The notes: generated from the sequence alone by a model not told the origin. DNA of 64,000 nt from Macrostomum lignano (GCA_002269645.1 NIVC01000175.1:744001-808000), one strand, 5' to 3'; numbered from the stretch's first letter, positions 36,601-45,600 are shown. Numbers and translations: made by a program.

Positions 36601-39600
36601 CTACTCTCACACAGCAGCCACTCTGCTCTCTCCCTTCACCCGCTCTACTCTCTCCCTTCACCCACTCTACTCTCTCCCTTCACCTGCTCTACTTTCTCTC
36701 TTCACCAGCTCTACCTCTCACGGTTCACCCGCTCAACCTCTCACCCTTCACCCGCTCAACCCTCACCCTTCACCCGCTCTACTCTCTCCCATCACCTGCT
36801 CTACTCTCTCTCTTTACGAGCTCTACCTCTCATGACTCCACAGAGTTGAAATATCCAATACATTTATGGTTCAATCTATTTGATTTGGCGTGTCAGACAG
36901 TCTGAGATTCTGTCAGGGATCAGGGTGTAATGATATTCCTGCATTTGCATCATGTCTATTCTTCTCCCTAATGTCTATATACCTTGAGGAAGCAGATCTG
37001 CATAATGCGGGCATATGATAATTACAGCGTATTAGGCTAAAGAGGAAATTAGTACCATTGTAATTTGTACCGTCCTTTTCCTTTCTTTAGCCTAATTAGT
37101 AACTTTGTAAGTCAATCTCACTGAAGCAGCCAAAGAGTGGCTTTTGTACATCCTTGCAAAACGGAACCAACCCTTTCGACCGCTATTACCTTCTAATTCT
37201 TTGAATTGTAAAAGTACACAATTTGATTCTTTCCTGGGAAGTTGGTCAAGATATTCTTCTAGCGGAAAGCTATTGATATCTGAGAAATATAAGTGACGCA
37301 AATGGGAATATCTATTAGATTTTAACTAAAATATAGATTTGAAACAATGCTGTGAATTTAGAGAATAGAGGGAGATAGGAAATGTAGGGATATGGGGATA
37401 TGGAGGTGGGAGATGTAGAGAGAAAGGAGATGTAGGGAGATGGGTAGAGAGATAAGGAGATGGGTAGAGATGTAGGGAGATGGGCAGAGATGTAGGGAGA
37501 TGGGTAGGGATGTAGGGAGATGGGTAGAGATGTAGGGAGATGGGCAGAGATGTAGGGAGATGGGTAGAGATGTAGGGAGATGGCAGATGTAGTGAGATGG
37601 GAGATGTAGGGAGACAGGAGAGGTAGGGAGATGGGAGATGTAAGGAGATGGGAAGAGATAGGAAGATTGGAGTTGTAGGGAGATGTGAGATGTAGGGAGA
37701 TGGGAAATGTAGGGAGATGGGAGATGTAAGGAGATGGGAAGAGATAAGAAGATTGGAGATGTAGGGAGATGGGAGATGTAAGGAGATGGGAAGAGATAAG
37801 AAGATTGGAGATGTAGGGAGATGGGAGATGTAAGGAGATGGATTGGTATATTTAAAGACAGACCCTCTGCATTAGCAAGATCAGTATTGTCAGCTCTTCA
37901 TCTCTCTTACCTTCTTTTATTAGAACATATTCTGCATGGTAACATCTATAGAATTTGGAATTCGATGACTGAGATAGCTTTGTTCAATGTCAAACTTTAA
38001 GACCACAAACTTTCAGGAAATCTTTGCTCAGCCACATCCGGCAGGCCAGCGTGCTCAACTGCGGTCAGACCTGCCAAAGAATGAAAGAGTTCTACATGGC
38101 TCCCGTGGTTCGATTCGTGTATAACACGGTGAGCTTTACCGCCGAGTTCATGCGTCTAGGGAGCCTAATTTGATGTGTCTGTAGTGCCTAATTTGATGTG
38201 TCTGTAGTGCCTAATTTGATGTGTCTGTAGCGCCTAATTTGATGTGTCTGTAGCGCCTAATTTGATGTGTCTGTAGTGCCTAATTTGATGTGTCTGTAGT
38301 TCCTAATTTGATGTGTCTGTAGTGTCTAATTTGATGTGTCTGTAGTGCCTAATTTGATGTGTCTGTAGTGCCTAATTTGATGTGTCTGTAGTTCCTAATT
38401 TGATGTGTCTGTAGTGCCTAATTTGATGTGTCTGTAGTGCCTAATTTGATGTGTCTGTAGTGCCTAATTTGATGTGTCTGTAGTGCCTAATTTGATGTGT
38501 CTGTAGTGCCTAATTTGATGTGTCTGTAGCGCCTAATTTGATGTGTCTGTAGTGCCTAATTTGATGTGTCTGTAGTTCCTAATTTGATGTGTCTGCAGTG
38601 CCTAATTTGATGTGTCTGTAGTGCCTAATTTGATGTGTCTGTAGCGCCTAATTTGATGTGTCTGTAGTGCCTAATTTGATGTGTCTGTAGTGCCTAATTT
38701 GATGTTTCTGTCTGTCAGGGATGTCTAATGTAGTGTGTCAGGGATGCCGTATGTAGTGTGTCAGGGATGCCTAATGTAGTGTGTCAGGGATCCCTAATGT
38801 AGTGTGTCAGAGATCCCTAATGTAGTGTATCAGGGATCCCTAATGTAGTGTGTCAGTGATGCAATGCGTCAGGAATGTCTAATGTAGTGTGTCAGGGATG
38901 CCTAATGTAGTGTGTCAGGGATGCCTAATGTAGTGTGTCAGGGATCCCTAATGTAGTGTGTCAGAGATCCCTAATTTAGTGTGTCAGGGATCCCTAATGT
39001 AGTGTGTCAGTGATGCAATGCGTCAGGAATGTCTAATGTAGTGTGTCAGGGATCCCTAATGTAGTGTGTCAGTGATGCAATGCGTCAGGAATGCCTAATG
39101 TAGTGTGTCAGGGATCCCTAATGTAGTGTGTCAGAGATCCCTAATTTAGTGTGTCAGGGATCCCTAATGTAGTGTGTCAGTGATGCAATGCGTCAGGAAT
39201 GCCTAATGTAGTGTGTCAGGGATCCCTAATGTAGTGTGTCAGGGATGCCTAATGTAGTGTGTCTGAGATAGAATGTGTCAGGGATGTCTAATATGTCAGG
39301 AAAGCCGAATGTAGCGTGTCATGACATGTCAGGGTGCCAAAATGTGTCCTAAATAGGCACAGGTATTTTCTTTGGTAGTGGAAGCGAAATGGTATTCATT
39401 GCGATATGATATAAAAAGTACATAGAGCCCTTTATCCAGTATCAATAAATAACATTGAACACCTTCCGTGCACTTAAATTTCAGTTCTCCTATCTAACCT
39501 TCCTATTCATGTTCAGCTATTTGCTTCTGTTCGATTTGAAGCACGATTTCACCGTGATGGAGTATATTGTAATTTCCTGGATTGTCACTTTGCTTTTAGA

Positions 39601-42600: not shown

Positions 42601-45600
42601 TGTCTACGTTCTCTTGACCAACATCCTCATGTTTAACCTGTTGATCGCCATGTTCTCCAGCACCTACGAATCGATCAATCAGTTCTCTGCTCTGCACTGG
42701 AATTACCAACGGTACAGCATGATCAAGGAGTACATTGAAAGGTCACCGCTAGCTCCACCGCTGATCATTTTCTGGCATGCTTACGAGCTTGTGTTCTTTA
42801 TCCAGTTGCGATATCAGGGTCGCAAACTATCGGAACTGGAGGACCCGCTGAGAATCAGTTATAAAGACAATGTTAAAAAGGAGCGCGAACTCGTCAAGTG
42901 GGAGCACATGAAGGCGATGGACTTTTTGAGACAGGATCAGGAGTGTCATGGAAAGAAGGTGGGTTTTGATTGGCTGGGCGATGGTGAGTGCTTGGGCAGA
43001 GAATCGGAGGATGGGGTGGTGGGTGCTTGGGCAGAGAATCGGAGGATGGGGTTGTGGGTGTTGGGGCAGAGAATCGGAGGATGGGGTGGTGGGTGCTGGG
43101 GCAGGGAATCAGAGGATGGGGTGGTGGGTACTGGGGCAGAGAATCGGAGGATGGGGTGGTGGGTGCTGGGGCAGGGAATCGGAGGATGGGGTGGTGGGTG
43201 CTGGGGCGAGAATCGGAGGGTGGGGTGGTGGGTGCTAGGGCGAGAATCGGAGGGTTGGGTGGTGGGTGCTGGGGCAGGGAATCGGAGGATGGGGTGGTGG
43301 GTTCTGGGGCAGAGAATCAGAGCCTAGTGGTCTAGCGCGGCGCTCTGATGTGCCAGCGGCCCAGGCTCGATTTCAAGTGCAGTCCCATTAATTTGGTGCT
43401 AATTTGGAATCTCGGCTTGGCTCTGCTCGTGCAATTAAAGTCCTTGAGGGCCAACCCCCAAGGCACAGTGAAGTGTGCATGTCTAACGATAAAATAAAGT
43501 CAGGGCCGCTGTACACTCCTGTGTGAGTGTGTGCCTGTGCGTATGACTGCGTACGTATCCGCGCGCTGGTGTACCTGCTCAGGGGAGCCGGCGGAATGGG
43601 CAGAAAATGCCTCTCGCCGGTTGTGTGACAATGTCGCTTAAAGTGCGCCAGGGTGCACACAGCCTCTAACTAAACGGGGTGGCGGTTGCTCGGTCGAGAA
43701 ATCGGTGAATGGGGTGGCAGGTGTTAAACCATCTCTACATCTCAGTAAAAAATAACAAAACACAGGGCGGTCGCTCGGACTCAAAGTCTGTCATAGTCAG
43801 GACTTCTGGTCCCCAGCTGGGTGCCGGCGGCCTTCTCCCGGCAGCGGCTGACGTGGCCAAGCAGATGTCGGACGCGACTAGCGGCATCGGGATGGAACTC
43901 GAAAAGAAATTCAAAAGCGTAGACACTCAGCTGACAAAGATTAGCACTGATTTCGATCAGAGATTGACCGACCTGTCAAACACGCTGAATGGATTCAGTG
44001 TTGCTGTGCAGGCGCTTCGGGAAGGCCAGGAGCGGCTGGCCTCGGTGCAGCAGGCGCGAGCAGTGGCCGGGTCGGTAAACACAGCCGAGGCGCAGCAGCA
44101 GCAGCTGAACCAACTCGAGCAGCGAGTTCTGGAAGCCGTCACCACAGCTTATCAGTCAGCCCCGCCAGCCTGGTTCCAGGAAATCGCCAGAACAGCCGCT
44201 GCGGAAGCTCTGGCCTCCACTCCGGTGTCAGTGGGGCAGCTGGACCAGGAGGTGCTGCAGCAGTTGGCTTCGGCCAGCTCCAGCAGCGGCACAGCGGAGA
44301 GGCGCTGGCGTCGACGGGGCGCCGCTCCGGCCAGTTCGGCAGGTGCAGATCCGACCTCCGGCAGCGCTGCTGTTGAAGGCGGCGGATTGCAGGGCTCCAG
44401 CCTGACTTCTGCTGCTTCAAAAGCGGCTGGTGCGACAACGGCGGGTGTCGCTGAGCCCAGAGGAGCCGCGGCGGCGACAGCAGCAACGGGAGCCACCGCC
44501 GCGGAGGAAGGAGACGACGAGGAGGACGATTTTGACGACAACGAAGATCTGGAAGAGGACGCGGCCACCATAAGGCCGGTGGTGGACGATCCGGGAACCG
44601 GGCGTCTGATTGAATACCGGAGCCTGCAGCACCGCCTGTGGCGCTACGTGCCGTTCAACTTTGAGCAGTACCCGGGCATGCGGATGAATGTGCCGCCGGA
44701 CAAGATCCCGTGGGAGGTGAGACTGGGGAGCCTGGCAGGTTTGGCTGTTTCACCGGCTACATTTACCTGTTTTACCGGTTAGATTTACCTGTTTCACTGG
44801 TTAGATTTACCTGTTTCACTGGTTAGATTTACCTGTTTCACATAGTTAGATTCACCTGCTTCACTGGTTAGATTTACCTGCTTCACTGGTTAGATTTACC
44901 TGTTTCACTGGTTAGATTTACCTGTTTCACTGGTTAGATTTACCTGTTTCACTGGTTAGATTCACCTGTTTCACTGGTTAGATTTACCTGTTTCACTGGT
45001 TAGATTCACCTGTTTCACTGGTTAGATTTACCTGCTTCACTGGTTAGATTTACCTGCTTCACTGGTTAGATTTACCTGCTTCACTGGTCAGATTCACCTG
45101 TTTCACTGGTTAGATTCACCTGTTTCACTGGTTAGATTTACCTGTTTCACTGGTTAGATTCACCTGTTTCACTGGTTAGATTCACCTGCTTCACTGGTTA
45201 GATTTACCTGCTTCACTGGTTAGATTTACCTGCTTCACTGGTTAGATTCACCTGTTTCACTGGTTAGATTTACCTGTTTCACTGGTTAGATTTACCTGCT
45301 TCACTGGTTAGATTTACCTGCTTCACTGGTTAGATTTACCTGCTTCACTGGTCAGATTCACCTGCTTCACTGGTTAGATTCACCTGTTTCACTGGTTAGA
45401 TTTACCTGTTTCACTGGTTAGATTCACCTGTTTCACTGGTTAGATTCACCTGCTTCACTGGTTAGATTTACCTGCTTCACTGGTTAGATTTACCTGCTTC
45501 ACTGGTTAGATTCACCTGTTTCACTGGTTAGATTTACCTGTTTCACTGGTTAGATTCACCTGCTTCACTGGTTAGATTTACCTGCTTCACTGGTTAGATT

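What the first reader, a model, noticed from the sequence alone, without database searches (positions are those of the whole stretch)
38017..42958. Channel looks like a TRPM_PZQ (praziquantel target) orthologue with the Glu TRP-helix variant
Seen in sequence: S1 has Y-N-T-F-S-Y (N1286/T1287 in my model), S4 has R-L-M-Y (R1409/Y1412; human TRPM2 has RLMH), the filter is FGD, and the TRP helix has E-Y-I-E-R (E1573/Y1574/R1577). Recalled from the literature and to be verified: the Schistosoma mansoni TRPM_PZQ pocket uses N1388, T1389, R1514, Y1517, D1677, Y1678 and R1681 in a 2268-aa protein, and Asp versus Glu at the TRP-helix position tunes sensitivity. Spacings agree closely: R-to-Y 3 versus 3, R-to-acidic 164 versus 163, total length about 2221 versus 2268. 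Inference: the pocket is intact (Asn in S1) but carries the lower-sensitivity Glu variant, so PZQ should activate it at higher concentrations.
Basis: partly seen in the sequence, partly recalled or inferred. Interest (0 to 1): 0.8.

Follow-up and report, generated by a model that had tools for sequence, protein, structure and literature searches.

The report
Macrostomum lignano praziquantel-channel (TRPM_PZQ) gene
This is the already annotated gene Mlig004938g2 of the free-living flatworm Macrostomum lignano, a member of the praziquantel-target channel family whose low-sensitivity "Glu" drug pocket has already been described and tested in this species, so the reading is correct but not new.

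Summary
38017-42958 spans exactly four annotated exons, running from S1 to just past the TRP helix, of a large TRPM gene on the + strand. GenBank PAA88821.1 (BOX15_Mlig004938g2, 1954 aa) maps onto the window with no mismatch in 28 exon segments (19025-54624). The window is therefore Macrostomum lignano.

Orthology holds. In NJ trees the protein and two other M. lignano genes (58-63% identical) form a 100% clade. That clade is sister to neodermatan TRPM_PZQ (100% and 86% bootstrap) and excludes a second neodermatan paralogue clade and a meclonazepam-channel-like clade.

I checked 17 published Sm.TRPM_PZQ pocket residues. Fifteen are identical. The differences are T1518->Ile and D1677->Glu, which is the published M. 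lignano "N-I-E" configuration.

Rohr et al. 2022 already expressed Ml.TRPM_PZQ. They reported (R)-PZQ EC50 of 18 uM, and E1495D gave about 2.5-fold higher sensitivity. So both the prediction and the proposed experiment are published.

One point stays open. I could not show whether the published clone is this locus or the other N-I-E paralogue, Mlig001812. This locus is the more likely.

Verdict: observation confirmed, interpretation supported, already known, low interest.

The parts
19025..54624 (+). Annotated coding region of the TRPM gene BOX15_Mlig004938g2 (PAA88821.1, 1954 aa), 28 exons. Domains: SLOG/MHR, TRPM2-like domain, six TM helices, TRP helix, coiled-coil region, NUDT9H-like C-terminus.
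   Evidence: Exact peptide mapping of P0170 to the window. Pfam hits LSDAT_euk, TRPM2 and Ion_trans. Cluster names.
38017..38128 (+). Exon encoding the end of pre-S1 and the first half of S1 (...[16 protein letters not shown]). Asn codon (Sm N1388 equivalent) at 38123-38125, Thr at 38126-38128.
39485..39613 (+). Exon encoding the rest of S1 and S2 ([12 protein letters not shown]...[12 protein letters not shown]). Holds the equivalents of Y1392, F1395, W1421 and L1425, and the S2 E-x-x-Q pair of the TRPM Ca2+ site.
41527..42055 (+). Exon encoding the S2-S3 linker, S3 (SDSWNKLD = W1451/N1452/L1454/D1455 equivalents), S4 and S4-S5 (CIRLMYI: Arg 41761-41763, Tyr 41770-41772, Ile 41773-41775), S5, pore helix and FGD filter (42019-42027).
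   Evidence: Alignments to solved TRPM2/TRPM5 structures.
42531..42958 (+). Exon encoding S6, the TRP helix ([17 protein letters not shown]: Glu 42728-42730 = D1677 position, Tyr 42731-42733, Arg 42740-42742) and the post-TRP helix.
44633..54621 (+). NUDT9H-like C-terminal domain in seven exon pieces (end of 43766-44716, then 46776-46862, 47711-48001, 48746-48895, 49783-49809, 50810-50926, 54502-54621). The Nudix box region is degenerate ([19 protein letters not shown]...).
   Evidence: No Pfam NUDIX hit. Homology to the C-termini of schistosome TRPM_PZQ and the paralogues.
32039..32206 (+). Candidate 168-nt cassette exon that is not in the annotation (…[13 protein letters not shown]…). It looks like a duplicate of the motif in the next exon ([12 protein letters not shown]). 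It is frame-preserving and shares the 30650 donor with the annotated splice.
   Evidence: splice sites and frame. A two-motif arrangement is seen in homologue P0020. There is no transcript evidence.
14231..14998 (+). Two candidate 5' exons (14231-14359, 14792-14998) encoding ankyrin repeats. They splice in frame to 18947, upstream of the annotated start at 19025. Whether they belong to this gene is a hypothesis.
   Evidence: Pfam Ank_2. Other flatworm TRPM paralogues carry ANK N-termini. There is no supporting protein in the databases.

Best explanation
The region encodes the transmembrane core of Macrostomum lignano gene Mlig004938g2. This is one of three M. lignano co-orthologues of the flatworm praziquantel-activated channel TRPM_PZQ. 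It is a long, TRPM2/TRPM8-like channel. By homology it is expected to form a tetrameric, Ca2+-permeable, non-selective cation channel with an acidic FGD filter. The ligand cavity lies at the base of the voltage-sensor-like domain, between S1-S4 and the TRP helix. All named praziquantel contacts are present: Asn and Tyr in S1, Trp/Leu in S2, Trp/Asn/Leu/Asp in S3, Arg/Tyr in S4, and Tyr/Arg/Pro in the TRP segment. The gatekeeper acidic residue is Glu instead of Asp, and the residue after the S4 Tyr is Ile instead of Thr (N-I-E). In published simulations Glu at this position projects into the cavity and pairs with the S4 Arg, which displaces praziquantel. Such channels therefore respond only at micromolar drug concentrations. 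The same Glu, together with the S2 E-x-x-Q and S3 N-x-x-D residues, makes up the conserved TRPM Ca2+ site. Glu therefore looks like the ancestral state, and the Asp of flukes and cyclophyllidean tapeworms looks derived. Shown here: gene identity, exon structure, clade placement and residue identities. Taken from the literature: channel function, praziquantel potency and the E->D effect. Inferred: that the published Ml.TRPM_PZQ clone is this locus, and that Ca2+ binds at this site.
For: PAA88821.1 maps to the window without mismatch. The top phmmer hit is 99% identical and comes from M. lignano. S. rodhaini CAH8536228 carries all 19 published Sm.TRPM_PZQ residues at a constant offset of +766, so it serves as a numbered TRPM_PZQ reference. 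Against it the window is identical at 15 of 17 pocket positions and differs only at T1518I and D1677E. NJ tree on 502 columns: M. lignano triad 100%, triad plus S. rodhaini TRPM_PZQ 100%, with paralogue B outside at 99.5%. NJ tree on S3-TRP: the triad is sister to TRPM_PZQ of a fluke, a tapeworm and a monogenean at 86%. Published data: M. lignano TRPM_PZQ is N-I-E with only two pocket changes, EC50 18 uM, and E1495D is 2.5-fold more sensitive. The FGD filter is linked to Ca2+ permeability. The window's Glu aligns with E1110 of Nematostella TRPM2, and its Asn/Asp align with N918/D921.
Against: The trees are distance-based on one alignment each. Only one full-length neodermatan TRPM_PZQ sequence was available, because the library holds one representative per 50% cluster. 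Paralogue B sits on a long branch, which could push it outward artificially. The published residue number E1495 matches neither the annotation (E1297) nor my model (E1462). Adding the hypothetical ankyrin 5' exons (+138) and the cassette exon (+56) gives about 1491-1498, which is close but not exact. A second M. lignano gene, Mlig001812, is also N-I-E. No function was measured here.
Confidence: 0.88

Rival explanations
1. The window's gene belongs to the TRPM_PZQ clade but is not the channel that was published. In this reading the published Ml.TRPM_PZQ is the other N-I-E paralogue (Mlig001812), and this locus is an uncharacterised sister gene whose praziquantel response is unknown.
For: Mlig001812 also has Asn/Ile/Glu at the three variable positions. 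The published numbering E1495 fits no available model of the window's gene exactly. No paper text names the locus.
Against: Mlig001812 has an extra change next to the S1 Asn (T1389->Ser) and RLVY instead of RLMY. The paper reports only two pocket changes. Its annotated protein starts with an apparently complete N-terminus and has E1240, so it would need +255 residues to reach 1495. The window's gene needs +198, of which about 194 can be supplied by candidate exons.
Confidence: 0.2
2. The M. lignano triad descends from the gene that existed before TRPM_PZQ and paralogue B separated. It would then be co-orthologous to both neodermatan clades, and its grouping with TRPM_PZQ would be a long-branch artefact.
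For: No M. lignano member of paralogue B appeared among the 150 best hits. Paralogue B has a long branch and long S3-S4 insertions. The window shares Ile at the T1518 position with paralogue B.
Against: Bootstrap support for triad + TRPM_PZQ excluding B is 100% and 86%. The window shares W1421, Y1678, the [17 protein letters not shown] motif and the [10 protein letters not shown] segment with TRPM_PZQ and not with B. Ile at this position is also common in outgroup TRPM2-like channels, so it may simply be ancestral.
Confidence: 0.1
3. It is another TRPM paralogue, for example the meclonazepam channel TRPM_MCLZ or a generic ADPR-gated TRPM2.
For: It shares the TRPM2-like architecture with a NUDT9H tail. 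Glu in the TRP helix is the state in all other TRPM paralogues.
Against: S1 has no histidine where TRPM_MCLZ has H827/H831. The MCLZ-like sequences (O. viverrini P0051 and the M. lignano ANK-TRPMs) fall outside the 18-member clade that holds the window, which has 95.5% support. There is no Nudix box and no Pfam NUDIX hit.
Confidence: 0.02

Closest known systems
Macrostomum lignano TRPM_PZQ (Ml.TRPM_PZQ) of Rohr et al. 2022, PNAS (PMC9910428)
   Same: Same species. Same N-I-E pocket configuration, with only two changes from the schistosome pocket. Glu in the TRP helix.
   Different: Identity of the clone with this locus is not proven. The published Glu is number 1495, against 1297 in the GenBank model and 1462 in my model.
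Schistosoma mansoni TRPM_PZQ (Smp_246790, 2268 aa), compared through S. rodhaini CAH8536228
   Same: Same architecture. FGD filter. 15 of 17 named pocket residues. Spacings Arg->Tyr 3 and Arg->acidic 164 vs 163. 52% identity over about 720 residues.
   Different: Asp1677 is Glu, Thr1518 is Ile, and Gln1673 (the partner that holds Asp away from the pocket) is Ser. The S2-S3 linker is three residues shorter. The published consequence is micromolar rather than sub-micromolar praziquantel potency.
M. lignano paralogues Mlig001812 and A0A1I8HSQ2
   Same: Same clade (100% bootstrap), same architecture, Ile and Glu at the variable positions.
   Different: They are 58% and 63% identical to the window's protein. 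Mlig001812 has Asn-Ser in S1 and RLVY in S4. A0A1I8HSQ2 has Ser in place of the S1 Asn (an S-I-E pocket).
Neodermatan paralogue B (S. spindale CAI2730781/2, T. solium TsM_000429800, C. sinensis KAG5451156, E. caproni VDP70171); possibly the Smp_130890 group
   Same: Sister clade, NUDT9H tail, Asn in S1, RLMYI in S4, Glu in the TRP helix.
   Different: W1421->Met, Y1678->Phe/Cys, Q1673->Glu, a 60-100-residue insertion between S3 and S4, and about 41% identity.
Nematostella and human TRPM2, TRPM5, TRPM8 (solved structures 6co7, 7mbp, 6mix, 6o6a)
   Same: Fold and the five-residue Ca2+ site (E-x-x-Q, N-x-x-D, TRP-helix Glu). Acidic filter as in Nematostella TRPM2 (YGE).
   Different: About 30-35% identity in the TM core. 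S4 has His where TRPM_PZQ has Tyr. There is no functional Nudix box in the window's protein.

Membership tests
TRPM_PZQ (flatworm praziquantel-activated TRPM) | Long-TRPM architecture: SLOG/MHR N-terminus, six TM helices, TRP helix, coiled coil, C-terminal NUDT9H | tested here: met
   Pfam LSDAT_euk, TRPM2 and Ion_trans. The NUDT9H-like tail aligns with schistosome TRPM_PZQ and its paralogues. There is no Pfam NUDIX hit, so the tail is degenerate.
TRPM_PZQ (flatworm praziquantel-activated TRPM) | Groups with TRPM_PZQ orthologues and not with other flatworm TRPM paralogues | tested here: met
   NJ bootstrap 100% and 86%. Caveats: distance method, and three lineage-specific co-orthologues.
TRPM_PZQ (flatworm praziquantel-activated TRPM) | Conserved VSLD/TRP pocket residues (N1388, Y1392, F1395, W1421, L1425, W1451, N1452, L1454, D1455, R1514, Y1517, Y1678, R1681, P1686) | tested here: met
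   All are identical. The reference numbering was validated on S. rodhaini. Only 17 of the 23 published pocket residues could be named from accessible text.
TRPM_PZQ (flatworm praziquantel-activated TRPM) | High-sensitivity subtype: Asp at the TRP-helix gatekeeper (D1677) | tested here: not met
   Glu (codon 42728-42730). This places it in the low-sensitivity subtype, as published for free-living flatworms, monogeneans and pseudophyllidean tapeworms.
TRPM_PZQ (flatworm praziquantel-activated TRPM) | FGD pore filter | tested here: met
   QMFGDFG at 42019-42027. FGD is reported for Sm.TRPM_PZQ.
TRPM_PZQ (flatworm praziquantel-activated TRPM) | Stereoselective activation by (R)-praziquantel | not testable with these tools
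   Published for Ml.TRPM_PZQ (EC50 18 uM). Whether that clone is this locus is unproven.
TRPM_MCLZ (meclonazepam-activated TRPM) | S1 histidines (H827, H831), S4 His/Tyr/Phe at position 946, Arg->TRP-Tyr spacing 174 | tested here: not met
   S1 has Arg and Asn at those positions and the spacing is 165. MCLZ-like sequences fall outside the window's clade.
ADPR-gated TRPM2 | NUDT9H with an intact Nudix box or ADPR site | tested here: inconclusive
   The Nudix box region reads [19 protein letters not shown], and there is no Pfam NUDIX hit. The N-terminal ADPR site was not examined.

The most novel reading that the evidence does not exclude
M. lignano carries three diverged TRPM_PZQ co-orthologues with different pockets: N-I-E here, N(S)-I-E in Mlig001812, and S-I-E in A0A1I8HSQ2. 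The gene in this window may not be the one that was profiled. In that case the praziquantel response of this free-living model worm would be the sum of several channels. It would also include a natural Ser variant at the S1 hydrogen-bonding position, which has not been described.
Probability: 0.2. Interest if true: 0.35.

Novelty: already known. Interest (0 to 1): 0.15.

Why it matters
TRPM_PZQ is the target of the only drug used against schistosomiasis, and the Asp/Glu gatekeeper explains why some flatworms need much higher doses. For this window nothing new follows. The one small addition is that the species has three co-orthologues with slightly different pockets. This matters to anyone using M. 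lignano as a genetic model for praziquantel action.

Tried and rejected
1. Micro-exon at 39709-39756 ([16 protein letters not shown]). I suggested it because of an FW-x-RI match to a Cichlidogyrus fragment. It is absent from the M. lignano annotation and from schistosome TRPM_PZQ, which reads EEIKQ-IAW-AVLSG. I rejected it as constitutive and kept it only as a passing note.

2. My first gene model (2108 aa) missed five small annotated exons and the NUDT9H exon at 46776-46862. It also included one unannotated exon. It was superseded by the exact mapping of PAA88821.1.

3. The word-indexed protein search returned only short fragments and no M. lignano protein. Organism identification needed the exhaustive HMMER library plus the cluster look-up.

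4. An exact look-up of the neighbouring GPCR ORF found nothing. Contig DRR639838 for fragment P0019 is an AT-rich, unrelated flatworm.

5. The supplementary tables of PMC9910428, PMC12861061 and PMC13020021 are not held. The full list of 23 pocket residues and the Ml.TRPM_PZQ accession could therefore not be read.

6. A full-text search for Mlig004938 found no paper.

7. Rfam and tRNA scans of the window found nothing.

8. No solved TRPM_PZQ structure exists in the PDB copy.

9. Structure prediction was not run. The tool returns no coordinates, so it could not test the pocket geometry.
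Full report
What is in the window. The 64-kb window is eukaryotic DNA of about 45% G+C. It carries multi-exon genes on the + strand, and the introns are filled with minisatellites. Between about 19 kb and 54.6 kb lies one large TRPM channel gene. I first built my own model from open frames and GT/AG sites. Later I found that GenBank protein PAA88821.1 (hypothetical protein BOX15_Mlig004938g2, Macrostomum lignano, 1954 aa) maps onto the window without a single mismatch, in 28 exon segments from 19025 to 54621 plus the stop codon. 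The best hit of an exhaustive phmmer search was a 99%-identical M. lignano UniProt entry. The window is therefore the Mlig004938g2 locus of the free-living flatworm M. lignano.

Check of the observation. It contains exactly four annotated exons: 38017-38128, 39485-39613, 41527-42055 and 42531-42958. After splicing, S1 reads VRFVYNT|FSYLTFLF. S4/S4-S5 reads [11 protein letters not shown]. The filter reads QMFGDFG. The TRP helix reads [15 protein letters not shown]. Alignments to solved TRPM2 and TRPM5 structures confirm that these segments are S1, S2, S3, S4 and the TRP helix. The annotation gives N1010 and E1297. My model gives N1175 and E1462.

Check of the recalled literature. N1388, Y1392, F1395, W1421, L1425, W1451, N1452, L1454, D1455, R1514, Y1517, Y1678, R1681 and P1686 are named as pocket residues in the 2021 preprint. 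T1518, D1677, Q1673 and W1667, and the Asp-versus-Glu effect, are in Rohr et al. 2022. The 2268-aa length, the NUDT9H domain and the FGD filter are in Park et al. 2019. I did not find T1389 named as a pocket residue.

A numbered reference. No S. mansoni sequence was directly available. Schistosoma rodhaini CAH8536228 is an N-terminally truncated model of 1488 aa. It carries all 19 published residues at a constant offset of +766 and has the published spacings 126 and 163. I used it as the TRPM_PZQ reference.

Orthology. M. lignano has at least three related genes: the window's gene, A0A1I8HSQ2 (63% identical) and Mlig001812 (58%). I built a neighbour-joining tree of 125 TRPM sequences on 502 columns. 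In it the three form a clade (100% of 200 bootstraps). That clade joins S. rodhaini TRPM_PZQ (100%), and the group joins a second neodermatan clade that I call paralogue B (99.5%). Paralogue B comprises S. spindale 2242/2328 aa, Calicophoron, Clonorchis KAG5451156 and E. caproni VDP70171. I built a second tree on S3-TRP that adds the Schistocephalus and Cichlidogyrus TRPM_PZQ fragments. It gives the M. lignano triad as sister to TRPM_PZQ of a fluke, a tapeworm and a monogenean (86% of 500), with paralogue B outside. Sequences with the TRPM_MCLZ-like signature fall further out. These have His in S1 and His/Tyr in S4, and they are O. viverrini KER32702 and several ankyrin-bearing M. lignano TRPMs. 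The caveats are the distance method, the single full-length TRPM_PZQ representative and the long branch of paralogue B.

The pocket. At the 17 pocket positions that I could name, the window is identical to the schistosome channel except at two: T1518 is Ile and D1677 is Glu. Outside the pocket proper, Q1673 is Ser here. In simulations Q1673 is the residue that holds Asp1677 away from the cavity. Rohr et al. describe exactly this for M. lignano: an N-I-E configuration with only two amino acid changes, the Ile in the S4-S5 loop and the Glu in the TRP domain. Mlig001812 has a further Thr->Ser next to the S1 Asn and RLVY in S4. A0A1I8HSQ2 has Ser in place of the S1 Asn. Paralogue B differs at W1421 (Met) and Y1678 (Phe/Cys).

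How it works. By homology this is a tetrameric, Ca2+-permeable, non-selective cation channel. Its acidic FGD filter resembles the YGE filter of Nematostella TRPM2. Praziquantel binds at the base of the voltage-sensor-like domain. It hydrogen-bonds to the S1 Asn, the S4 Arg and the TRP-helix Tyr and Arg, and it stacks on the S4 Tyr. With Glu at the gatekeeper position, published metadynamics shows the side chain projecting into the cavity and pairing with the S4 Arg, which displaces the drug. Ml.TRPM_PZQ was activated by (R)-praziquantel with EC50 18 uM, against 0.05-0.3 uM for fluke and cyclophyllidean channels. E1495D raised sensitivity only about 2.5-fold, so other features of the M. lignano backbone also limit potency. 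The Glu aligns with E1110 of Nematostella TRPM2, and the S3 Asn/Asp align with N918/D921. S2 keeps the E-x-x-Q pair. To my knowledge of the TRPM2/4/5/8 structures, these five residues form the Ca2+ site. Glu therefore looks ancestral and the Asp of flukes and cyclophyllideans looks derived. This last point is inference. The NUDT9H-like tail has no recognisable Nudix box and no Pfam NUDIX hit, so catalysis is unlikely. ADPR gating was not assessed.

What remains open. The papers I could read do not name the M. lignano locus that was cloned, and their supplements are not held. The published Glu is residue 1495. The annotation puts it at 1297. The annotated start at 19025 lies inside an open frame that continues upstream to an acceptor at 18947 and includes a C-x-C-G...H motif, which is also present near the N-terminus of Mlig001812. 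Two upstream ankyrin-repeat exons splice in frame to it (+138 residues). An unannotated, frame-preserving 168-nt exon at 32039-32206 would add 56 more. Together they give about 1491-1498. This is close to 1495 but not exact, so I put the identity of the window's gene with the published clone at about 0.7-0.8.

Comparison with what is known, and verdict. The finding is a correct reading of a gene that is already annotated. For this species its pocket configuration, its praziquantel potency and its E->D mutant are already published. It is a member of the TRPM_PZQ family of the low-sensitivity Glu subtype. Novelty: already known. The only points that may be of modest use are the existence of three diverged co-orthologues with different S1 residues and the probable incompleteness of the annotated 5' end.

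Noticed in passing
window 2938-63999, e.g. 17258-18908, 33740-35083, 44745-46666: Almost every intron of all three genes holds one or more minisatellite arrays. Periods are 17-26 bp (some 33-86 bp), arrays are 0.3-1.9 kb long, and copies are 80-99% alike. The unit sequence differs from one intron to the next.
   Followed up: partly
window 14231-14359, 14792-14998, 18947-19024: Two ankyrin-repeat exons and an upstream extension of the first annotated exon are in frame with the TRPM gene. The annotated start Met (19025) lies after a conserved C-x-C-G...H motif, so the GenBank model may be 5'-truncated. Other flatworm TRPM paralogues have ankyrin N-termini.
   Followed up: partly
window 32039-32206: An unannotated, frame-preserving 168-nt exon candidate carries a second RRRRSSLE motif, a basic, PKA-like site. 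It looks like a duplicate of the next exon's [13 protein letters not shown] homologue fragment (P0020) has both motifs in tandem.
   Followed up: partly
window 39709-39756: A 48-nt open frame with usable splice sites ([16 protein letters not shown]) lies in the S2-S3 intron. It resembles EFWERIGDVLK in a Cichlidogyrus fragment. It is absent from the M. lignano annotation and from schistosome TRPM_PZQ.
   Followed up: yes
window 20672-20698, 49783-49809: Two annotated 27-nt micro-exons ([17 protein letters not shown]) are missing from other database isoforms of the same gene (P0173/P0174, P0021). They are probably alternatively spliced.
   Followed up: partly
window about 1500-11180 (+): Upstream neighbour: a multi-exon class-I-like myosin gene. 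It has Pfam Myosin_head hits, a P-loop GESGAGKT, and a proline-rich tail ending in an SH3-like segment.
   Followed up: partly
window 58994-60697 (+): Downstream neighbour: a single-exon rhodopsin-family GPCR of 568 aa (Pfam 7tm_1 and Srw-like) with a long, low-complexity C-terminal tail. One UniProt model (P0033) wrongly fuses the TRPM C-terminus to it.
   Followed up: partly
window 52428-52904 (+), inside the last TRPM intron: An open frame with a weak DDE_3 transposase match (E 4.5e-6, just below Pfam's cut-off). It is probably a transposon remnant.
   Followed up: no
related proteins P0022 (A0A1I8HSQ2) and P0177 (Mlig001812g2), not in the window: Two further M. lignano TRPM_PZQ-clade genes have pocket variants S-I-E (Ser at the S1 Asn position) and N(S)-I-E with RLVY in S4. 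I found no mention of several M. lignano co-orthologues in the papers I read.
   Followed up: partly
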